The notes under the pieces: generated by a model | The model's input: only the letters and a program-made list of their open reading frames with translations | The model's database searches: none | Told to the model about the DNA's origin: nothing | Source: Ruditapes philippinarum | Lineage: Eukaryota | Length of the DNA stretch: 64,000 bases | NCBI RefSeq assembly: GCF_026571515.1 | Contig: NW_026863607.1 | Coordinates: 186,001 to 250,000 of the forward strand | Direction of reading: 5' to 3' | Made by a program: the position numbers and the translations under genes | Shown: piece after piece, positions 13,583 to 24,228 of the stretch | How positions within the stretch are numbered: position 1 is the stretch's first letter | How the letters are laid out: the number at the start of each line of letters is the position of its first letter

Positions 13583-15976
13583 TTCTCCACAAATATGAGG
13601 CTAATAAGACATTTGTCGGAATGAACATATAGTATATAAATTTACTATCTATTTCATAAAATCTGGATAAGTTCCCTCGAAAATTAGTAACAACGCAGAC
13701 CTTGTGTGATTGAATCGCTCTATGAGAGATAATGTTACTTCTATCACGCCTTCTTGCATAAACCATATAAAGAAGAAGCGTTAAGAGGTTATTAGTTTTA
13801 CCATAAGAACTTTTAACGCAGATCCTGTTTTGTCAGTTAAATGGATCGTGATAGAAATGCGGTTTTTTGTTTGTTTTTTTTTTTCCTTCCTGTCTTTGCA
13901 TTTCAATGCAACATTTATCTCCCGATTATGTCACATTATTGTGTTGACTTCCCGTTACTATTCAATCGAAAACAAATGCCACAATTTAAATTGGAAGCTT
14001 TGTTTACAAATAGTATCACACTTTTTTGTATATTTCTTGTAATGAATATTAGGATATGTAGAGTATAATGGAACTTTTCTAAGTTAAACTCGGACATAAA
14101 AATATATTCAATTTGGTAGTAATATGCCCTTTGTAGATTGTTATTTTAGTAACTTTATGGTTCCTTTCTTTTAAATAAAATTTTAAAAAATGGTCATAGA
14201 TACGTTTGGACTTATTCAAGGTTAGAAAAAGAAATAATACTTCGGACAAATGGTATTGCAACAATAGAACTGAAGGATAAGTCATAATCAAGCATTTACA
14301 ATGAGCATCTGCGATGTTAAGACATGGGCACGTTCTCACCTTTAGTCTATTTATTATCACTTAATTAATCACGAAGGTCTGTCATTACATCCCGATCATG
14401 TGCGGAATGATTGCGTCCAAATGCCTTACGATAAAGATTAAAAATGCAACCTTTACTTAAATCGTGGCCAATTCTTGTGTCAGATACAACTTGTGATAAG
14501 AGCAACTATTGTTCAAGAAAACAAAGTCACATTTGCACCGACACAAATCGATTTTTCAAAATAGTATTTTATTACCATAAATGTGGCATTTGACGAATTG
14601 TCCTTTCAAACAACTAAGTAAACATATAAGTTGTGGTCAGTATTTGGCATTACTGTTGGCTATTTTAACACATCCGACGGTCAAATGATACATTTTTGAT
14701 GAAAAGTCATTGCCGATGAGGCAAAATCAGACAAGGAATTTGTTTTACAGGGGTGATAAAAAATATCGTTCTCGTTTTGTCCAGACTAATTACTGTTGTT
14801 TGTATGACCAGACAAGGGATTTATGGGAAGAACTTGTTAAATACATGACAAGGTATCATGAGGTAACAAATTAAAGAGCACGTGAATTCGTTCTAATTTC
14901 TAGCATTTTAGCAATTTTAACTGTTACAGTAATGTTTTCTCTCATATGTGCAAGAGAGTGCTAATTTTATTGCCCGGTATGGAGATGTAATGTGCATGAA
15001 AATGAGTTAAGAAACTCTGTACATCAAATGTTTTATATGTTTGTAAAGTTTTTGAGACATAGATGTACGTATATACAAGAACTTATATATAGGGGAAAAG
15101 GTAAAATAACAAAATCATTCATCAAAAGACTTTATTAAACTTTAAACCAAACAAATTCAAAAAGAAATATCTAGAATGCTTTTATATATTAATTTAATAT
15201 ATTTTTTCTATCTATCTAGCAATGTTCCATATCAATATTTATATTGAAAAATTGATAGTGATTTTATTATTTACTTATAACAATCAAAGAAATATTGACT
15301 CCTTTTAATTTTGCATTTAAAGTTTCTTTTTAATTTCAAATTCTATAATGATACATTTTTGATATTGCTAACTTTAAAATGGTGTACTTTTTATTTGTTA
15401 CATTCCAGGTCGTATCATTTCGCAAATCATTGCTTTCAAAACCCGATTAAGATTAAGAGAAGATACAAAGAGCATAAAAACGGAACTTAGAAGCATGTAT
15501 TTATATTTGCTGTAAACATTGACGTCATCGCTTTATGGTTGTTCTTGTTGTTTTATGATGACATTCATATACTATGATGTTACAAATATCGTTATCTGTT
15601 AGACATTTTGAGAGAAAACAACAGTTAAAGCTCATGAATGTATTCCTAAAATATTTAAATAGATTATGAGATAAGCTCTTTGCAGAATAAAAAAAATGCT
15701 TTAATGATTATTTAAGTTTTAAGCTCACGTGTAAGATAAGACATCCAATGAAAATTCAAATAAAGGGATGTATGTTGATTGAAATAGATTCGTTTCAATG
15801 TATAGCGCGTATCTGTCAACTAAATCATTTTAAATAGCGTGTGTAAATACCATCGGTTTGCATCCTTTGTTTGCAAAAATGACTATGTTTACAAAATTAT
15901 AAATTGCAATGCGTCAAATATATCACTGCTGAAAATTGGCTGTTTTTGTTGCCAATCAGAACTATAATTTCCGGTT

Positions 15977-16107
15977 TTACTTCCTTCTGCGTCCCACTGT
16001 TCTCATAAGCATGCGCAATCTGTTTGTGTTCATGTTGACTGACATTGGTAGCCGATTTTGAGCCAGAGTTTTTGTCATCATATCCAAGTTTTCCAAACCA
16101 GCTACTC
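15977..16107 (-). CDS. Neuropeptide precursor, last coding exon: GVAGLENLDMMTKTLAQNRLPMSVNMNTNRLRMLMRTV-GRRRK*; CRH/DH44/ELH-like amidated peptide
   Basis: Acceptor gttttgttttcgttatattttag| at 16108. Phase-1 reading gives an open frame ending GGA CGC AGA AGG AAG TAA, i.e. an amide-donor Gly, a basic cluster and a stop. The ORF track reads this exon in a different frame. Confidence 0.88.
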
Positions 16108-18309
16108 CTAAAATATAACGAAAACAAAACTATGTTAAAATTAATGTTCTTAAAGGATTCTGTATTCTCTATTGTATGATACAATATGTTACGTTTTTTA
16201 TATATTTATTTTGTTTGCATTGAAATCATTGTCAGCTTATTTCATCAAAGATTAGGCCTTCATTTCCGTCACTGTGTGACCTATCGTTAAATGTAACAAA
16301 TGCACTTTAGATAAGAATTGCAAAATTATGTATTTTTTCCGCGCAATATGAATATGAGTGACAATGTACGTCAAACAAAAAACTAAGAAACAAAAAACAA
16401 GCAGTAAATACGCCAAGTGAAGGTCGGCTGTCCCTTGGCATAAAATTACTTAGAAATTTAAATAAAATACAATTATCTGGTATTATCAAACAACCGATTT
16501 AACAGATCTACCTTATCAAACAGCTGCGATTGAAATGACATTGAAGAAACTTTATGATATATGATGATGAAAAGTGGGAGTAAAAATTGTTTCATAAGCT
16601 CTGACATATTTCATTTTGAAATTATAGTCGTTAATGCCTTTTATCGTTGATGTTACATGCTTTATGTCATACAATTGTCCAATATGTGATAAATATATTC
16701 ATTACGACAGTGTTACAATGTTACCCTACAATACTGAATTCTATAAGAGAATTGCAGAGCTGTTAAGCCTAGATTGGGCCAGGCAGTTGCAATGTCTTTG
16801 GCAAAAAACCTACAGTGTTCTGCATTACATTTAAAGTTAAATAAAAGGTTTGCCCGTTGATACACTACACTGATTAATTATTAATAATGTGAATAGAAAA
16901 CATTTTCAAGGTCTAATATGAATTTGATATGGATATTCTTGATTTGAAAAATGAAAACGATGATTGACGGAGTACAATTTGAATTTGATATAAATAGTTT
17001 TGGACGGGACTAGAAGGAGTAAACTAGTGATATGGCATGGACTATTTTGGCTTGGGAAATAAAAAAGATGCTAAATTGATAAAATCAGATCCAATAATTA
17101 TCACCAATGGTGCAAACGCTTGTACATTTTACAAGGTGTGAAATATAGAATTACACTTAATTTTGGAAATGGATTAGATTTTATATTTACCCATATGTTT
17201 TCAACGACTATAATTGAAACGATCTAGTACTGTCGGCTACGATTTTAAATTGATGTTATCATTTTCCAAAATATGTTATTCTGCTAGGACACAAGATAAT
17301 TAGATTTAGTCACTAACACTTATTTGAAATGACGTAAACATATCCTCCCTTGTAAGCCAAACTATAATAGGTAATTTAACAGCGACAACAACACTTGGAT
17401 TTCCTTAAATCAATATCTTTCTTACAGCCTAAATACGTTAGCAAGAGCAATTAGAATTTGTTATTTCTTCATAAATACTAAATTCTGTCACCGGAAGGTA
17501 TAATTTGTACCTTCTAATAGACACCTATGGAAGATAAGTCTTAACACCAGGTTAAGAAAACGTTAGCAAACCGTTATCAGATTTGTCAAAAGACCTTGTT
17601 AACGTAGATCAAACCGTTACTGAGCTAACAGAACATCCAATTATAGGAGATAATGGGCTTAAACAGAACAATACTTTTACTCATCGCTAAGCATCATATG
17701 CGCTTGCATGATAGTTGTACTTTTTTTTTGTTTTACAGCGAGGCGTTCAAATTGTATCAGAATAGTTTGGATATGTCAAATGCAGCGGCCATGGAGTAGA
17801 AATCAATTCACATTAATTTCGGTCTTCAATTGCTAAAATTTCATTTTTCATCAAAGCACAAGTACAACCCAAGGTATACAAGTTGTTCCCTTAACAGAAT
17901 GCGTAGGAATACAAATTCACTTATTATCAACATTTAAAGATTTTTTCAATTAATACATAAGACTATTTTAGTGGCCTCTAATTATTCAAGAAATAAATCA
18001 GTACTAGTTAAACGACGGTCAAAAGTACCTTCAGTAATGATATACAGCGTTATAATATAATTATAATACTGGTTTAAACAATCATATATTTTACATCGTC
18101 AGAACATATGAGGTGACATTTATTCAATGACTCAATAGTTTTAGCTGACGCTATGTAGAACATGTGTGGGTGGTTCGATATTCACCTTAAAGGACACACT
18201 TTAGGTATGAAGAATCAAAAACAGATCTTTAAAATCATTTTTTTTGTAGGAATAGCTCGATTATTGCCGCGAAACCACATGAGTAAGTACAAGCTATAGA
18301 TAAATTTAC

Positions 18310-18363
18310 CTAAACGTTTAAATCTTGATGCACCTTGGTCGTTCTCGTTGGCTTTCAGCTGGT
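18310..18363 (-). CDS. Neuropeptide precursor, coding exon 2 (54 nt, phase 1-1): DQLKANENDQGASRFKRL, containing the KR convertase site
   Basis: Acceptor attcttttt..atttcag| and donor TTA G|gtaaat. The exon is open, its length is a multiple of 3, its phases match both neighbouring exons, and it is locally GC-richer than its flanks. Confidence 0.88.
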
Positions 18364-19302
18364 CTGAAATTAAAAAGAATCACACATATGAAATCTTCAA
18401 ATATTAACCAAATTCAGAAACCTATAAAAATATATCCGCAATCTAAATGCCGTTTGACAAAGTGCATAAATAAATAGATAGTTCATTAAGAAAATTATCT
18501 TGAATACAACTGGCAAGCAAAGTTTCCTATTCGAAAACCGTTTAATTGCTAATATGTGTAATAAAAATCGCACATGACTGTTAACAATATTGGCTCTTTT
18601 TTAACTATAACAACAGCTCTTTACTGATTCCGCTATTTGTATATTCACGCCTTTGCTTTGATAAATACAATTCTTGATGTTCTATTTTTGTATTAGAGAA
18701 ATAATGCAATAGGCGTCAAGCAAACAATGTACTTGTATTTCCCATATTGTTCGGTTTCACTTTCCGTTTGTCTGATTCTTGCATTGTCCGTTTAATTATC
18801 ACCATAAATGATATCTACACACTTCATACTGTCATTTAATGATGGCACTGTGTTAAATTTAAGCTTCTTTACTTTATAATTACGTCATTTGAAACAGCTC
18901 GCCAACTATCTAAAAAGACAGGAATAATTAGAAGTAGTTCTTCCACGTTGCCAGATCGACATGTGATTTTGTTTTGTAAAGTAACATTTGTTAGATATTA
19001 TGATAGTTTTATTCTTGAAACAGGTCTTGTATTTCGAAAATTAAATAATGACTAGTATATGGCGTTAGATCAGAAACAAAATTCAAATATGAAAACTCGA
19101 AAATATCGTCCCATATGTTTGAGTTGTTTTAACATATAGGAAAATGAACATTTAGGATTTTTGAAGTCCTAGTGTCAAAGAATAAAATTATGTTTCTTTC
19201 AAGTTTATTGAATATATGTGTATTTTAAATATAATATCTTGAATATCTTTGATATTTTTGAACAGATCCAAAGAGATTATTACATATTTATCTTATTATT
19301 AA

Positions 19303-21134
19303 GGCGACAACGGACACTTTCCGTAGTACTACCATAAATGTCTTTTAAACCAACTTATTTTAGTAATAATTGTTATTTATTTAAATTATGTGCATTAAAT
19401 GTCTTTGATCTTCATAAAAAATATCATATTTGAAAAAAATGCCTTTGTAAATTATTGATTTTGATACAAAAATCTATAATATCAAAGTCATTTTTTATTT
19501 TTTTGTCATCAAACTCTTGGAATATATATAAACATAATTATAATATCTGGGGCACCGTGTCCCAGATTTGTTCTATCTTTTCTCAAAAAAAAAGTACGTA
19601 ACGTCAAACAATTTATGCGACTTTTTTCACCATACATATTACGTAATTAAAGATAATTAAGTCGCTGATTGAGCAAACAAAAATCCCTGACATGGTTCCT
19701 TCCGGAATTGAATTCCCTTTTATATGCTTTAAACCACATGTAAATTGCTTGTTGATTTAAAAAAGTTATGCCGATTCAAAGTTAGTCCGACGCGCATCAA
19801 ACGAAGTGTCATAAATCGGTTGTTCTCTCTCAAACCCCTACGTTTTCCGTTAAATTATTGTATAACACGCAAATATCACACCAAAGTGGGTGACACGATG
19901 TGGTAACTCATACTCTAACAACTTTTATTACCCAGTGACATCTGACCAATTAAAAAGCAGCTGATATTTTCTTCAAATCTTAACGTGATTTACTATCCGT
20001 CTGGTATCTGTCGCACATGTCACGTGACTATCTGTGAAATTTAAGGCACTTAGTGGGATAAAATGGAACGCATTTAACGTTCGTACTGCTATCGAGTAAT
20101 CATATTGTTTCGCTTTTGATGTTATTATTATTATCTAGCATCATCATCATTATTACTACAATATTATATCAGTGTCACTCTGCCTGTGTATTCGTGTATG
20201 AAATTCCGTTAAAATATCAATTAAAATAACGAAAAACTGTGCTCCTGACAGACTTTTAAAGTCCGTACATGGTACGTTGTACAAATAAGAACGGGATATT
20301 ATATATTTTTGTCCGATCAGTTCATATATTAAATGCTTGACATACATAGATTCAGTTTCTTCTTGGACATACAATAAGTTGTGTTCGATTTACTAATGAA
20401 CAATATATTCAAACCGTTCACTGAAAATATATTTTCATATCTTTAAGAATTAATTATCCGAAGACTATCGTAAAAAATAGTTTAGAAGTTTGTAAGGGCC
20501 ACCTGTCAACCTGTTCACATAAATGTGTTGTCTGTTTCTTTTGACATTGTTAGAAAAAACGAGGTTGCATGCAAAGCAAGCTCTTGAATCCGTACTTAAG
20601 TTCATAAACTCAATATAATGTCTATCAGATTACTTACGTGATAAATAAATTTCACACATTATGGATAAAGGCAGCTACATTGTTTTAACTATCCCAATGG
20701 TCGTGCGATTTACCGCTATGCTAAATTATTTGTTACATCTTGGCCGACAATTTCTTAATTTATAAAATGGCTACTTAAATGGTACACGATATAATGTTGA
20801 AATATTCATAAAAGATGTACAGTATTTTTATGATGCATGTATTACGAGTAATATCGACTGATAACAAATAAACCGGTAAGTCATGGATATATGGAACTAC
20901 CGATTTCCCTCATTGATGCCTCAATAGGGGGCGGCGTGTTATCGATAATTGACAGGCTACGCGCATAGCGGATAAAAAATGGTATAGGTATCGTTTTCAA
21001 ACGTTTAAAAACATAGTTTCTTGACTAACTGCTCTCAAAATTAAATCATGAATGTATTCAGAAAAGGTTGATAAATCTACTTAGCTAAAATCTCATTTTA
21101 GGTATTTTTAGTGATAATTGACTCCGTTGTCACT
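19303..21134. mobile_element. Putative non-autonomous Kolobok-type DNA transposon in an intron of the neuropeptide gene
   Basis: TTAA on both sides (19299-19302 and 21135-21138). Imperfect TIRs ggcgacaacgga / tccgttgtcact match at 10 of 12 positions and have RR..YY termini. No transposase ORF is present. Confidence 0.55.
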
Positions 21135-22545
21135 TTAATCTGTCCAGAATTTATTCCTATAATTGTGATATAAAAACATATTTTGTTTGATATTCTTCGT
21201 CGTTAGAGAGAAATATATTTCCCATTGTTTGATAAACCAAAATAATTTGATTAACAATCCACGTCATCAGAGGATCGTATTTTCTTCAGCATTTATATCG
21301 GATTTAATTAAATAAATGTTTCGATTTTTTTTCCTTCAGTCTAATGTATCTTTTACACATTACTTAACGTTACAAAAGTGCTGTAATGAAGCAGGGCTAT
21401 TTTCCAGCGCTCACTGGGAATATTAACACAATCCTTGCTGAATGCAAGCTTCATGCCGATACAATTATTATTACTGCTGATATAGTTAGGATCATGTGAA
21501 GTACACAAATTTGTCAAAGGTGTAACACTAATTTACTATAAATATTTATTTGCTCACCGGGTAAGGCGGCAATTCCGGAAAGAAACCATTATATTATAGC
21601 AACCTATTTTTATTAACAGCACATCCTAACATTCGATATGTCAAATTTAAATATAAAGTACATACAAGACATACATGTATGTCTGTTACCTAGGACCGCT
21701 TGATTAACCTTTAAGACACAGAAGTTTGAATATCTTCCTTACAACATATAAAACACTTAATGTACGTTCACGATGTTCATTGTTATTACATTTGTGTTTA
21801 TTATTTCTATATATTCATCATGTCTTGCTCCTACAAATTATTGTATTATGTTATTTGACTTTTGAGAAACGAAAATTTCACATTAAAAAAAACAATGTTT
21901 AAATTTTTTATTCTGTATTCGTTTTCTGATTGTATAAAAGTATTACTCTGTTAGTTTTTTTAGATAGCTTATTGATTTTAGCGAGTAAATTTCATACTGC
22001 ACTTGCAAGGAAAACCCTAAATAACACGATGCAGATAGCCAAAAAGCGGAAACACAAATCAGGTCTGAATATATATAGATATACGACAATATGTCATGTA
22101 GTTTGTTTCCTTACCATATAAAAGAGCTTGTAACATACTGAGAAAACATTTATGATCAGTGAAATCGGCTTACAACCAAAGTTGTAATGTTAGAAGAAGC
22201 AAATGTTAATCGAATAGTCAGGACTTGCATCCGTTGTTTTTGGGACCGATGCTACTGACTTCCAGTAAAATTTAATAAAGCACTATGCTATATCTACAAA
22301 ACTAATATATGTAGCCCAGTGTCACTAGGCAAGTATTACGACTTTTTTTATAGTAACAATATTATATTATATGGTGTTTCGTCAACAAAAGTCATTGTTA
22401 TGTTTAACATTTAATGAAATATGAATATCCTGTTCTCAATGATTAAGAATCTGTAGTTTACGCATTTATTATACGGACTAGTTGTACTGGCTGAGTATTT
22501 TACCTCATAATTAAATAAAAACAGTTGAATGGAAATAATTCTCAC

Positions 22546-22816
22546 CGTTTATGTAGTCGTAATTTGATGACTCAGCATTGTTCAAATGTTCATCTAACCA
22601 CTCCGAGGCTTTTCGGTTGAGATCAAGTTGTAATCGTGGTAAAAGATAAATGTCCCATAACGTTTTAAAGTCTTGTGTGGCAACGTCCTCATTGTTATAC
22701 CCTGTGTCAGTCGATCTGTCACCAGACACGGCCATTATTAATGAAACTATGACGGCAAATAAACATATAAACACTCGATGATTCAAATATAAGACATTTC
22801 CTCGGTAGATTTCCAT
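22546..22816 (-). CDS. Neuropeptide precursor, coding exon 1: signal peptide and acidic pro-region (MEIYRGNVLYLNHRVFICLFAVIVSLIMAVSG|DRSTDTGYNNEDVATQDFKTLWDIYLLPRLQLDLNRKASEWLDEHLNNAESSNYDYIN)
   Basis: ATG at 22816-22814 sits in a GCCATGG Kozak context. A hydrophobic stretch VFICLFAVIVSLIMAVSG ends in small residues, as expected for a signal peptide. There is an upstream acceptor (ccttttcag, exon start 22877) and a phase-1 donor AAC G|gtgag at 22545. Confidence 0.9.
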
Positions 22817-24228
22817 GGCAAAGATTGTTTGATTTTGCAACTTTTTTTTCTATTCGTTACTTTTACTTAAATGAAATCTGAAAAGGAAACATTTTGTTTA
22901 GAAATAAATATCATACCAAAATCAGAATTAAAATACAAACATTATATTTGAAGAAAATATGTTTGTTAAGACTGAGTTCAAATATCATATATTGCATCTG
23001 TGTCAATAATCATAAGTGATAAGGTGGTTTCTTAAATACGAAGAGTATCAGTCTACTATTACAATAATGAAGCAAAAAAAGAGACAGTCTGTTGAAATAA
23101 TTCGCCAATGCCAGATAACACCGTTATCCCTTATGCTTCCAATGATTATAACAAAAAAGTATGAAATTGTATGATAGAACGATGTGTTACAGCCTCTATT
23201 TACTATAAGAGTAGATTACTTTCTGTTCTAATAAATATAGAAACATCAACTATATCAAATTAGCACGATCATCCTATCAATGCTGTAATCTAATTAATAA
23301 AATGGTCGGACGTGATCTTCTCAGGATAAATGCGAAGTAAAATGCAAACAAATAGGCTTTTGACATGCAATAAGCAAAAGCTTTGTTACCATAACATTTA
23401 AATCAGAAAATTGTTATGTGAAATAACATTTACAACCTTTCGAGATATATCTACTTTTCTTAGCGGTTGCAGTCGAAGACTTATAGCTAATAAAAAGTAT
23501 GAACACAATAAAACCAATGTTTGATCTTTTTAAATATTTTTTTCTTAAAAACAATTTCGAGCAAAATCTGTTTAATTTCTAAATCACCTTTTCATGTTTC
23601 TAACATGCCTTTTGGCAAGTAAACTTTTGAAATTATCAGGCCAAAATTCGTATTCATTTACAGATTATTAAAACTACTATAAAAGCTTACTTTGCAAATT
23701 AGTTGACACAATTTCAAAATCGCAAATTCAAATAAAACATTTGTTTCGTATAATATATATCAAGAATTAGTTACTTTGTTTCGCAATTTATTATATAAGA
23801 TTTAAAATAATTCACTATTTTTTCTTTGTATCAAATCAACAACTTAGAATACATTAAAACTATAATGTATTTTATCTTCAAATATAAATTTTATGTCAAT
23901 GATAAATTTTATAAAAGCACAGTAAAATCCATTTTACGTTGTCATTCAGACATACTTATGCACTGACTTAACATCAGTCGATGATTAGGTTTGTTGACTT
24001 TTTAAATACAATTAATTTAAAAAAAAAAAAATAATTTATAAATGTTTAATTATATGGCGTATTTAAAAAAGATTATTAGAATATTTGTCCATATAAAGAA
24101 TAAATTTGTTTATTTTTGTTACTTATAGAATTTACTTTATTCCTTATCAAAACATATCACTTATATCAATAGATGAATTAAATTAATTATTTGTTATCAA
24201 ATATTAAAACTAATTAAATCGCAGTTAC

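What the first reader, a model, noticed from the sequence alone, without database searches (positions are those of the whole stretch)
15977..22816. Hidden three-exon prohormone encoding a divergent CRH/DH44/egg-laying-hormone-like amidated peptide
Seen in sequence: three phase-compatible exons with canonical splice sites join into a 151-aa protein. It has a 32-aa signal peptide, an acidic spacer, RFKR, a 39-aa peptide LGVAGLENLDMMTKTLAQNRLPMSVNMNTNRLRMLMRTV, and GRRRK-stop. Established knowledge: this is prohormone-convertase/PAM architecture, and amidated helical peptides of about 36-46 aa are typical ligands of secretin-family (B1) GPCRs. Inference from manual alignment: the C-terminus LRMLMRTV-amide matches CRH NRKLMEII-amide and Aplysia ELH LRQRLLEK-amide, and NLDMMTKTL matches ELH DLKAITDML and DH44 PLDVLRQRL. 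However, the hallmark [LI]-S-[IL] motif is replaced by LGVAG and the precursor holds a single peptide copy. It may therefore be a separate, little-described lophotrochozoan branch of the family and a candidate ligand for an orphan molluscan B1 receptor.
Basis: partly seen in the sequence, partly recalled or inferred. Interest (0 to 1): 0.9.

Follow-up and report, generated by a model that had tools for sequence, protein, structure and literature searches.

The report
Unnamed clam amidated-peptide prohormone gene
This is a real, transcribed three-exon gene of the Manila clam that encodes a secreted precursor for a single ~39-residue amidated peptide; it belongs to an unnamed family seen so far only in clams and freshwater mussels, and its proposed kinship with CRH/DH44/egg-laying hormone could not be shown.

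Summary
Three minus-strand exons (22816-22546, 18363-18310, 16107-15977) join in phase into a 151-aa protein. Transcript contigs from four independent studies carry both junctions. The protein is identical to NCBI's [quoted passage not shown], so the gene is annotated but unnamed.

Homologues turned up only in heteroconch bivalves (Mercenaria, Mactra, Mya with at least 7 copies, Sinanodonta, Potamilus), and none has a name. Conservation is highest at the R-x-K-R site, the peptide and the Gly-plus-basic tail, as in a prohormone. Three further divergent paralogue genes lie 117-150 kb away on the same contig.

The CRH/DH44/ELH assignment is not supported:
- No Pfam CRF or ELH match.
- No PDB peptide-hormone match.
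- Profile-profile and pairwise scores against ELH peptides do not exceed shuffled controls.
- The canonical two-peptide DH44/ELH gene lies elsewhere in the same genome.

A collinear eye-level resemblance to ELH remains (L-S-I-G-G-L start in unionid members, N-K-L-R-x-L near the C-terminus), so distant paralogy is possible but unproven.

Verdict: a new, clade-restricted family of an ordinary kind (amidated peptide prohormone). Receptor and function are unknown. Moderate interest.

The parts
22817..22981 (-). 5'UTR (extent inferred, not mapped)
   Evidence: The transcript contigs extend 331-436 nt beyond exon 2 (table 8). Of that, 271 nt are the exon-1 coding part, which leaves up to about 165 nt of leader if it is colinear. 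An in-frame stop lies 11 codons upstream of the ATG.
22546..22816 (-). Coding exon 1: Met1 to the first base of the Asp91 codon. It holds the signal peptide (22816-22721), the poorly conserved N-terminal pro-region, the conserved pro-region motif F-K-x-L-W-x-x-Y-[IL]-L-P-x-L-E-x-D-L (residues 49-66, 22672-22619) and the acidic spacer.
   Evidence: 100% identity to P0001; motif identity 0.42 against 0.14-0.16 in the flanks; hydrophobic core. The loose end in 4 runs equals window 22547-22576.
18364..22545 (-). Intron 1 (GT..AG, phase 1), 4182 nt. It contains repeat-like segments.
   Evidence: Short high-depth RNA contigs on both strands at about 19300-21300 do not belong to this mRNA.
18310..18363 (-). 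Coding exon 2 (54 nt): end of the spacer, the R-F-K-R convertase site (18325-18314), Leu108 (18313-18311) and the first base of Gly109.
   Evidence: covered by one contig in each of 4 runs. K106 is invariant; R104 and R107 are at least 90% conserved.
16108..18309 (-). Intron 2 (GT..AG, phase 1), 2202 nt. It lies two residues after the cleavage site.
   Evidence: table 5: a joint skipping 2202 bases, CT..AC on the + strand, in 4 of 4 runs. Paralogue B (L009) has an AG acceptor that puts the intron at the same position and phase; the copies at L010/L011 align over the same stretch.
15977..16107 (-). Coding exon 3: rest of the 39-aa peptide (to Val146, 15997-15995), the amidation-donor Gly147 (15994-15992), RRRK (15991-15980) and the stop codon (15979-15977).
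   Evidence: G112, N115, D117, L123, M130, S131, L139, L142 and G147 are invariant in 17 sequences.
15118..15976 (-). 3'UTR of about 860 nt, with AATAAA (minus strand) at 15136-15131.
   Evidence: Contigs run through 15700. The longest (X7) has 582 nt beyond 15700, which places its end near 15118. TTTATT on the + strand is at 15131-15136.

Best explanation
The locus is a real, transcribed gene of Ruditapes philippinarum (NCBI LOC132722671, 'uncharacterized'). It encodes a 151-aa secretory prohormone.

Inferred processing:
1. The signal peptide is removed, after about residue 32.
2. A furin/prohormone-convertase enzyme cuts after R-F-K-R107.
3. A carboxypeptidase trims the C-terminal RRRK.
4. 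Peptidylglycine alpha-amidating monooxygenase uses Gly147 to give the 39-residue peptide L108-V146-amide (monoisotopic mass 4431.30 Da).

The peptide is predicted at low confidence to form two short helices, G-L-E-N-L-D-M-M-T-K-T-L and N-R-L-R-M-L-M, joined by a variable, Pro-containing hinge.

The gene belongs to an unnamed family that dates back at least to the common ancestor of heterodont and palaeoheterodont bivalves. It sits in a tandem cluster of divergent paralogues. The peptide most likely acts as an extracellular signalling peptide (neuropeptide or peptide hormone) through a receptor that is not yet identified.

What is shown: the gene structure, transcription, conservation pattern and phyletic spread. 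What is inferred: secretion, cleavage, amidation and a signalling role. The peptide is not demonstrably a member of the CRH/DH44/ELH family.
For: - Gene structure and splice junctions.
- Identity to a public prediction.
- Full-length homologues with the same layout in Mercenaria (68% identity), Mactra, Mya (7 loci), Sinanodonta (2), Potamilus and 4 unnamed transcript or metagenome contigs.
- Mean pairwise identity by region: cleavage site 0.67, peptide N-half 0.57, peptide C-half 0.52, Gly+basic tail 0.64, against spacer 0.16 and hinge 0.19.
- Gly147 and Lys106 are invariant.
- Every family member has an N-terminal hydrophobic core. Net peptide charge is only about +1 to +3 (one member +6).
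- The pro-region is acidic, pI 4.1.
- The nearest language-model clusters for the whole precursor are all neuropeptide precursors: DH31, NPFF, urotensin-2B, NMU/NMS, 26RFa, CCK.
- Paralogues on the same contig have their own signal-peptide exon, R-x-K-R exon and peptide exon ending in G-R-[RK]-R.
- AlphaFold2 predicts helix 114-124, a coil, then helix 136-146.
Against: - No peptide has been detected.
- The expressing tissue is unknown, because run labels are coded and contigs cannot give expression levels.
- No signal-peptide predictor was available.
- R-x-K-R is also a furin site used in the constitutive pathway, so a non-neuronal secreted factor is equally compatible.
- The AlphaFold2 model has low confidence (mean pLDDT 56).
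- The apparent restriction to Heteroconchia may reflect search sensitivity. There was one single-sequence HMMER pass, and the profile search was limited by its word index.
Confidence: 0.7

Rival explanations
1. The family is an old, strongly diverged paralogue of the bivalve DH44/ELH (CRH-type) gene. Its peptide would then act on a secretin-type (class B1) receptor.
For: - Length and form agree: 39 aa and amidated, like Ruditapes ELH-2 (also 39 aa).
- The best pairwise alignment is collinear over almost the whole peptide: L-x-V-x-G-(P)-L-x-x-L-x-x-M near the start and N-K-L-R-x-L near the end.
- Unionid members start L-S-I-G-G-L-E-N-L-D-L-L, against ELH-1 L-S-L-T-G-G-L-R-S-L-A-D-M. One other member starts I-S-V. 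So the [LI]-S-[LIV] hallmark is present in some homologues.
- The mean pairwise score is slightly above shuffles (z 1.8; 16 of 300 shuffles reach it).
- hhalign of the whole precursors gives one local hit with P = 0.002.
Against: - Pfam CRF and ELH models do not match.
- Mature-peptide profile-profile scores are within the shuffled range, z -0.9 to +0.5.
- The best pairwise score is below the shuffled mean maximum.
- The P = 0.002 hit aligns this peptide's C-terminal half with the N-terminal half of ELH-2. It leans on the shared G-R-R-R-K processing motif (probability 12.8%), so it contradicts the collinear alignment.
- Gene structures differ. The ELH coding sequence is one uninterrupted ORF with two peptides. 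This gene has two phase-1 introns and one peptide.
- The peptide has a Pro-containing, length-variable hinge in the middle.
- The z of 1.8 is anti-conservative, because the sequences within each set are related.
Confidence: 0.25
2. It is a secreted effector that is not a receptor ligand. One example would be a host-defence (antimicrobial) peptide released from an anionic pro-region, as in cathelicidin-like or myticalin-like systems.
For: - The layout is an anionic pro-region followed by a basic (pI 11.5), amidated, helical C-terminal peptide.
- The family shows tandem copy-number expansion: Mya has at least 7 copies and Ruditapes 4.
- The transcript was assembled in at least 14 runs from 6 studies that are unlikely all to be ganglia.
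Against: - Net charge is low, about +1 to +3 in nearly all members.
- Acidic and polar positions (N115, D117, S131) are invariant between unionids and venerids. That fits specific receptor recognition, not membrane attack.
- Antimicrobial peptides usually evolve faster than their pro-regions, which is the opposite of the pattern.
- The language-model neighbours are neuropeptide precursors.
Confidence: 0.07
3. The ORF is a chance or non-functional product of a transcribed locus, with no peptide product.
For: There is no protein-level evidence.
Against: The full-length ORF, the cleavage site and the amidation signal are conserved across Venerida, Myida and Unionida. The splice junctions are identical in 4 studies.
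Confidence: 0.02

Closest known systems
DH44 / egg-laying hormone / CRH family. The species' own member is the two-peptide precursor LOC132736947, at G000:C1955 and C9240.
   Same: Both give a long (34-46 aa), C-terminally amidated peptide predicted to be helical and cut out after basic residues. As in vertebrate CRH precursors (from general knowledge), the single peptide sits at the extreme C-terminus. There is a loose collinear resemblance at both ends. Some homologues have an L-S-I or I-S-V start.
   Different: - No Pfam or profile match above chance.
- The window's peptide starts L-G-V, not [LI]-S-[LIV].
- It has a Pro-containing, variable hinge.
- It has one peptide, not the two typical of bivalve DH44/ELH (De Oliveira et al. 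2019, PMC6425005).
- It has two phase-1 introns, against an intronless coding sequence.
- Both genes coexist in Ruditapes, Mercenaria and Mya, so this one is not the orthologue.
Calcitonin / DH31 family
   Same: The top three language-model neighbours of the whole precursor are DH31 clusters, score 0.90-0.91. Both have a helix-hinge-helix build. The conserved G-L-D start of the core recalls insect DH31 (G-L-D-L-G-L; recalled from memory, a lead only).
   Different: - There is no C-terminal Pro-amide and no N-terminal Cys pair.
- Only 157 shared features, which is below the tool's 170 mark, and only 3 of 10 best hits agree; the tool itself rates such a call as probably wrong.
- The peptide alone gives nothing at 0.9 or above.
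- Pfam Calc_CGRP_IAPP does not match.
- The DH31 model PF27927 is not in the local library, so it was not tested.
PDF / cerebrin
   Same: The precursor layout is the same: signal peptide, associated pro-peptide, K-R, then a single amidated peptide at the C-terminal end.
   Different: PDF peptides are about 18-20 aa (from general knowledge). Pfam Pigment_DH does not match any of the 9 members scanned.
iPTH / PXXXamide / QSamide family
   Same: Both are long amidated protostome peptides. That family is linked to a secretin-type (PTH-like) receptor (PMC8398477, PMC8557429).
   Different: The defining Pro at position -4 from the amide is absent in all 17 members (the endings include R-T-V, A-A-A, R-N-A and G-S-L). 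No sequences of that family were available for an alignment test.

Membership tests
Peptide-hormone / neuropeptide prohormone (generic kind) | N-terminal signal peptide | tested here: inconclusive
   A hydrophobic 15-mer core (mean Kyte-Doolittle 2.0-3.1) sits near the N-terminus of all 17 members, followed by small residues (V-S-G, T-S-A). No SignalP-type tool was available.
Peptide-hormone / neuropeptide prohormone (generic kind) | Basic convertase site before the peptide, and Gly plus basic residues after it (amidation signal) | tested here: met
   R-x-K-R: K106 is invariant, and R104 and R107 are at least 90% conserved. G147 is invariant and followed by 3-5 K/R, then the stop, in 17 of 17 members. 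The same holds in 3 paralogues.
Peptide-hormone / neuropeptide prohormone (generic kind) | Conservation concentrated in the predicted mature peptide rather than in the spacer | tested here: met
   Identity is 0.52-0.57 in the peptide halves against 0.14-0.16 in the spacer regions.
Peptide-hormone / neuropeptide prohormone (generic kind) | The gene is transcribed and spliced as modelled | tested here: met
   One contig per run in 4 runs from 4 studies carries both junctions.
Peptide-hormone / neuropeptide prohormone (generic kind) | Mature peptide present in neurons or endocrine cells and active on a receptor | not testable with these tools
   This needs peptidomics, in situ hybridisation and receptor assays.
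CRH / DH44 / ELH | Match to the family's sequence models (Pfam CRF PF00473, ELH PF02323) | tested here: not met
   No hit at E<=10 for the window exons or for 9 family members. Whole-genome scans with both models do not return this locus, whereas PF02323 does find the canonical gene.
CRH / DH44 / ELH | Profile or pairwise similarity of the mature peptide above chance | tested here: not met
   hhalign, local and global, against ELH-1 and ELH-2 gives z -0.9 to +0.5 with 120 shuffles. The Smith-Waterman maximum of 31 compares with a null of 35.6 +/- 4.1; the mean score has z 1.8.
CRH / DH44 / ELH | N-terminal [LI]-S-[LIV] motif | tested here: inconclusive
   The motif is absent in the window's peptide (L-G-V) and in most members. 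It is present in two of the three unionid members (L-S-I; the third starts F-S-I) and in one unnamed member (I-S-V).
CRH / DH44 / ELH | Being the species' orthologue of DH44/ELH | tested here: not met
   A canonical two-peptide precursor carrying PF02323 exists on other contigs. It also exists in Mercenaria and Mya, which carry this family as well, and in Dreissena.
CRH / DH44 / ELH | Activation of a DH44/CRH-type class B1 receptor | not testable with these tools
   This needs a receptor assay.
Calcitonin / DH31 | C-terminal Pro-amide (both) and N-terminal disulphide (calcitonin) | tested here: not met
   No member ends in Pro, and the peptide has no Cys.
PXXXamide / iPTH | Pro four residues before the C-terminal amide | tested here: not met
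   It is absent in all 17 members.
PDF | 18-20-aa peptide matching Pfam Pigment_DH | tested here: not met
   The peptide is 39-47 aa, and there is no Pigment_DH hit.

The most novel reading that the evidence does not exclude
The peptide family could be the endogenous ligand of a lophotrochozoan secretin-type receptor that lacks a convincing native ligand in bivalves. One candidate is the DH31-receptor-type cluster (L-DCc1). DH31 itself is reported lost in most molluscs, and mussel L-DCc1 receptors respond to mussel calcitonins only at micromolar doses (Thiel et al. 2021, PMC8557429). Another candidate is the 'PDF-like' receptor group. In that case the family would be a strongly diverged class-B1 ligand, DH44/ELH-derived or DH31-derived, that replaced or supplemented the ancestral one in heteroconch bivalves.
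Probability: 0.12. Interest if true: 0.75.

Novelty: new member of a known kind. Interest (0 to 1): 0.42.

Why it matters
Published bivalve neuropeptide catalogues rest mostly on oysters, scallops and pearl oysters. A conserved family of long amidated peptides that is present in clams and freshwater mussels, but missing from those catalogues, adds a candidate hormone for commercially important clams.

No family motif was found in the full text of the paper library or in the supplements of three molluscan catalogues.

The family also has tandem paralogues, which make it a tractable case of lineage-specific peptide diversification. The predicted peptide is defined exactly (sequence, amidation, mass 4431.30 Da). 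That makes peptidomic detection and receptor deorphanisation directly testable, including the secretin-type receptors that still lack clear ligands in molluscs.

Tried and rejected
- Pfam scans of the exon translations and of 9 family members gave no relevant family. The only hits were weak chance ones (OpgC_C, Gastrin at E 0.07 in one member).
- PDB sequence searches with the family profile and with the peptide exon found only designed helical proteins, protein A and an LRR protein. No peptide hormone appeared.
- The ESM Atlas gave only generic neuropeptide-precursor neighbours for the whole precursor. DH31 came first but below the tool's reliability marks. The peptide alone gave nothing usable.
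- Genome-wide Pfam scans:
  - The CRF hits were a mitochondrial-carrier exon and noise.
  - The Pigment_DH hit lacks an amidation Gly and contains an internal RR, so it is probably chance.
  - Calc_CGRP_IAPP stayed below its cut-off.
  - PF27927 (DH31) is not in the library.
- hhalign of the whole precursors gave one P = 0.002 hit. I rejected it as evidence because it rests on the G-R-R-R-K motif and is not collinear.
- The metagenome scan returned one locus that was already known.
- Literature searches for family motifs found nothing in full text or in the supplements of PMC6425005, PMC8398477 and PMC5996578.
- The AlphaFold2 model has low confidence. I used it only for secondary structure and ran no fold search.
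- Complex prediction was not run, because no receptor is claimed.
Exons were searched by reference. All later whole-protein searches used the public record P0001 that the exon-1 search returned.
- The search of earlier findings gave nothing that bears on this locus.


Full report

Yes. On the minus strand the window shows:
- an ATG at 22816, with an open frame running to a GT donor after 22546;
- a 54-nt exon at 18363-18310, flanked by AG and GT;
- a last exon starting after an AG at 16107 and ending with a stop at 15979-15977.

The exon translations are as follows. Exon 1 gives 90 codons plus one base. Exon 2 in frame gives QLKANENDQGASRFKRL. Exon 3 gives VAGLENLDMMTKTLAQNRLPMSVNMNTNRLRMLMRTVGRRRK-stop. 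Both introns are phase 1, splitting Asp91 and Gly109. An in-frame stop lies 11 codons upstream of the ATG.

The exon-1 search returned a public 151-aa protein, P0001, named [quoted passage not shown]. It contains all three exon translations in this order. Later whole-protein work used that record. The organism is therefore the Manila clam. The gene is not hidden from public annotation; it is simply unnamed.

**2. Transcript evidence.**

Fourteen runs from six studies each hold about a tenth of the sampled words of the 7-kb stretch, which is roughly the exon share. Read laying is limited to 6,000 letters here, so I laid four of these runs (four studies) on 15700-21699.

In every run one contig (805-1481 nt) covers the 3'UTR and exon 3, and then skips 2202 bases with GT..AG on the minus strand. 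It covers exon 2 and continues with letters that lie outside the stretch. Those letters are identical to window 22547-22576, the 3' end of exon 1.

Junction 18310/16107 is thus seen directly. Junction 22546/18363 is seen through the loose end, to the base. The longest contig places the mRNA 3' end near 15118, 13-18 nt after an AATAAA at 15136-15131.

Contigs cannot give expression level or tissue, and the run labels are coded.

**3. Relatives.**

A full HMMER pass over 1.84 billion representatives found 17 proteins at E<=0.001. A profile search added more.

The named sources are Mercenaria mercenaria (68% identity), Mactra antiquata, Mya arenaria (seven loci on one chromosome), Sinanodonta woodiana (two neighbouring genes) and Potamilus streckersoni. 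All are labelled hypothetical or uncharacterized. Four further full-length members come from unnamed transcript or metagenome contigs.

Every named source is a heteroconch bivalve (Venerida, Myida or Unionida). No oyster, mussel, scallop, gastropod or annelid sequence appeared. This is non-detection at the available sensitivity, not proof of absence.

**4. Anatomy of the family.**

All members share these features:
- an N-terminal hydrophobic core;
- a poorly conserved stretch;
- a conserved pro-region motif, F-[KR]-x-L-W-x-x-Y-[IL]-L-P-x-L-E-x-D-L;
- an acidic, variable spacer;
- an R-x-K-R site;
- a 39-47-residue peptide;
- an invariant Gly followed by 3-5 Lys/Arg and the stop codon.

Within the peptide, G112, N115, D117, L123, M130, S131, L139 and L142 are invariant. 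The core reads G-[LM]-[DE]-N-[LFM]-D-x-[ML]-[TF]-[KA]-[TS]-L. A hinge of variable length follows, often containing Pro. Then comes M-S-[VMI]-x-x-[ML]-[SN]-x-[NGD]-x-L-[RQ]-x-L-[ML]-x-x-x-amide.

Mean pairwise identity is 0.67 at the cleavage site, 0.57 and 0.52 in the two peptide halves, and 0.64 in the Gly-basic tail. It is 0.14-0.19 in the spacer and hinge. This is the signature of a prohormone whose product is the C-terminal peptide.

Net peptide charge is low, about +1 to +3. The pro-region has pI 4.1 and the window's peptide has pI 11.5. AlphaFold2 with the family alignment predicts, at low confidence (mean pLDDT 56), helices at 114-124 and 136-146 separated by a coil.

**5. A local gene cluster.**

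Scanning the clam's own genome with the family profile found three more peptide exons. They lie on the same contig and strand, 117-150 kb from this gene and outside the window. They encode:
- ...G-V-A-G-L-D-N-L-D-L-M-T-K-M-L-G-K-T-M-V-T-G-T-S-L-S-D-M-Q-K-L-M-L-K-M-G-R-R-R-stop;
- two near-identical copies of ...G-F-A-G-L-E-N-L-D-L-M-S-G-I-F-S-K-L-P-M-R-S-S-A-G-I-S-D-M-Q-A-L-M-R-E-V-G-R-K-R-K-stop.

The first copy (L009) has an AG acceptor at the same intron position and phase as this gene.

Upstream of each copy lie an open frame with a start codon and a hydrophobic leader, and a small exon ending in R-[FM]-K-R. Ruditapes therefore has at least four genes of this family in tandem, as Mya has seven or more. 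Their expression was not checked.

**6. Testing the CRH/DH44/ELH call.**

(a) Pfam CRF and ELH models do not match the window exons or nine family members at E<=10.

(b) The same models were run over the whole 1.4-Gb genome and do not return this locus. The CRF candidates are a mitochondrial-carrier exon and noise. The ELH model finds a different gene on contigs C1955 and C9240.

(c) That other gene is an uninterrupted 196-aa ORF with two peptides: AQLSLTGGLRSLADMVYSQR...ALLSL-G-KR and SQQLSVSGPLSALANMLAAEGRRRKQSESFNNRMKLLEI-G-KR. This is the two-motif layout described for bivalve DH44/ELH by De Oliveira et al. 2019 (PMC6425005). Orthologues carrying PF02323 exist in Mercenaria and in unnamed transcript contigs; more distant relatives were found in Mya and Dreissena. 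The window's gene is therefore not the DH44/ELH orthologue.

(d) The family profile and the peptide exon find no CRF, urocortin, PTH, calcitonin or glucagon-type chain in the PDB at E<=10.

(e) hhalign of the two whole-precursor alignments gives one local hit (P = 0.002, probability 12.8%). It pairs this family's C-terminal half with the N-terminal half of ELH-2. It leans on a shared G-R-R-R-K motif, which is a processing signal and not evidence of descent.

(f) With mature peptides only, local and global hhalign scores against ELH-1 and ELH-2 fall within the range of 120 column shuffles (z -0.9 to +0.5).

(g) Pairwise Smith-Waterman over 17 x 27 peptides gives a best score of 31, against a shuffled mean maximum of 35.6. 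The mean score is slightly raised (z 1.8; 16 of 300 shuffles reach it). That figure is anti-conservative, because the sequences within each set are related.

What remains is an eye-level, collinear resemblance. The best alignment pairs L-G-V-A-G-L-E-N-L-D-I-M with L-S-V-S-G-P-L-S-A-L-A-N-M near the start, and N-K-L-R-M-L with N-K-L-R-L-L near the end. Unionid members begin L-S-I-G-G-L, like ELH-1's L-S-L-T-G-G-L.

I rate distant paralogy with DH44/ELH at about one in four. It is neither shown nor excluded.

**7. Other families considered.**

- **Calcitonin/DH31.** The language-model atlas ranks three DH31 clusters first for the whole precursor (0.90-0.91). However, only 157 features are shared and few of the top hits agree, which the tool itself flags as probably wrong. 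The peptide alone gives nothing. The defining C-terminal Pro-amide and the Cys pair are absent. The DH31 Pfam model is not in the local library.
- **PDF.** The length is wrong and there is no Pigment_DH match.
- **PXXXamide/iPTH.** The Pro at position -4 is absent.
- **Literature.** No family motif occurs in 8.4 million full texts or in the supplements of three molluscan catalogues.

I therefore treat the family as unnamed.

**8. Mechanism.**

The gene, its splicing, its transcription, its conservation pattern and its phyletic spread are shown. The following steps are inferred from established prohormone biochemistry:
1. Co-translational signal-peptide removal.
2. Cleavage after R-F-K-R by a furin or PC-type convertase.
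3. Removal of RRRK by a carboxypeptidase.
4. Amidation of Val146 using Gly147.

The product would be a 39-residue amide of 4431.30 Da.

Polar and acidic positions are invariant over a split as old as Unionida versus Venerida, and net charge is low. This argues for recognition by a specific receptor rather than membrane activity. The receptor class is unknown.

Thiel et al. 2021 (PMC8557429) note that lophotrochozoans keep DH31-receptor-type and PDF-like secretin-type receptors. They also note that DH31 is reported lost in most molluscs. This makes a class-B1 target conceivable, but it is speculation here.

**9. Verdict.**

The prohormone reading is well supported. The CRH/DH44/ELH assignment is not supported, and the orthologue lies elsewhere. 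The claim of a hidden gene is wrong, since the gene is annotated as uncharacterized.

The finding is a new, clade-restricted family of an ordinary kind. It has a precisely testable peptide and a tandem paralogue cluster. Interest is moderate.

Noticed in passing
Outside the window, same contig and strand: G000:C12094:356685-358540 (L009/L021), 325700-328066 (L010/L017), 335623-338912 (L011/L020): Three further genes of the same family form a tandem cluster 117-150 kb away. One is divergent, and two are near-identical copies of another type. Each has a leader exon, a small exon ending in R-x-K-R, and a peptide exon ending in G-R-[RK]-R.
   Followed up: partly
G000:C1955:395135-395725 (L004:1135-1725, +) and G000:C9240 (L003:1477-2103, -): The canonical two-peptide DH44/ELH precursor of the clam (NCBI LOC132736947, also labelled 'uncharacterized') is present on two contigs as near-identical copies. 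These may be haplotigs or a recent duplicate.
   Followed up: partly
Alignment A4 (ELH precursors of heteroconch bivalves), ELH-2 residues 153-157 of P0035: The second ELH peptide carries an almost invariant internal G-R-R-R-[KQ]. That could be an extra amidation and cleavage site, which would give a 19-residue amidated N-terminal fragment instead of, or besides, the 39-mer.
   Followed up: no
window 19300-21300 (intron 1): Many short, high-depth RNA contigs on both strands in all four runs do not join the mRNA. They are probably transcribed repeats or transposon fragments inside the intron.
   Followed up: no
window 15770 (3'UTR): All four runs from four studies read A where the assembly has G. 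The assembly may carry a minor allele or an error at this base.
   Followed up: no
P0002 (74 aa, JGI contig of 1183 nt): A public 'hypothetical protein' is 95% identical to exon 1 and reads through the donor site into intron 1 (...YDYIN-GENYFHSTVFI). It was therefore called on genomic DNA of this or a very close clam within a JGI data set.
   Followed up: no
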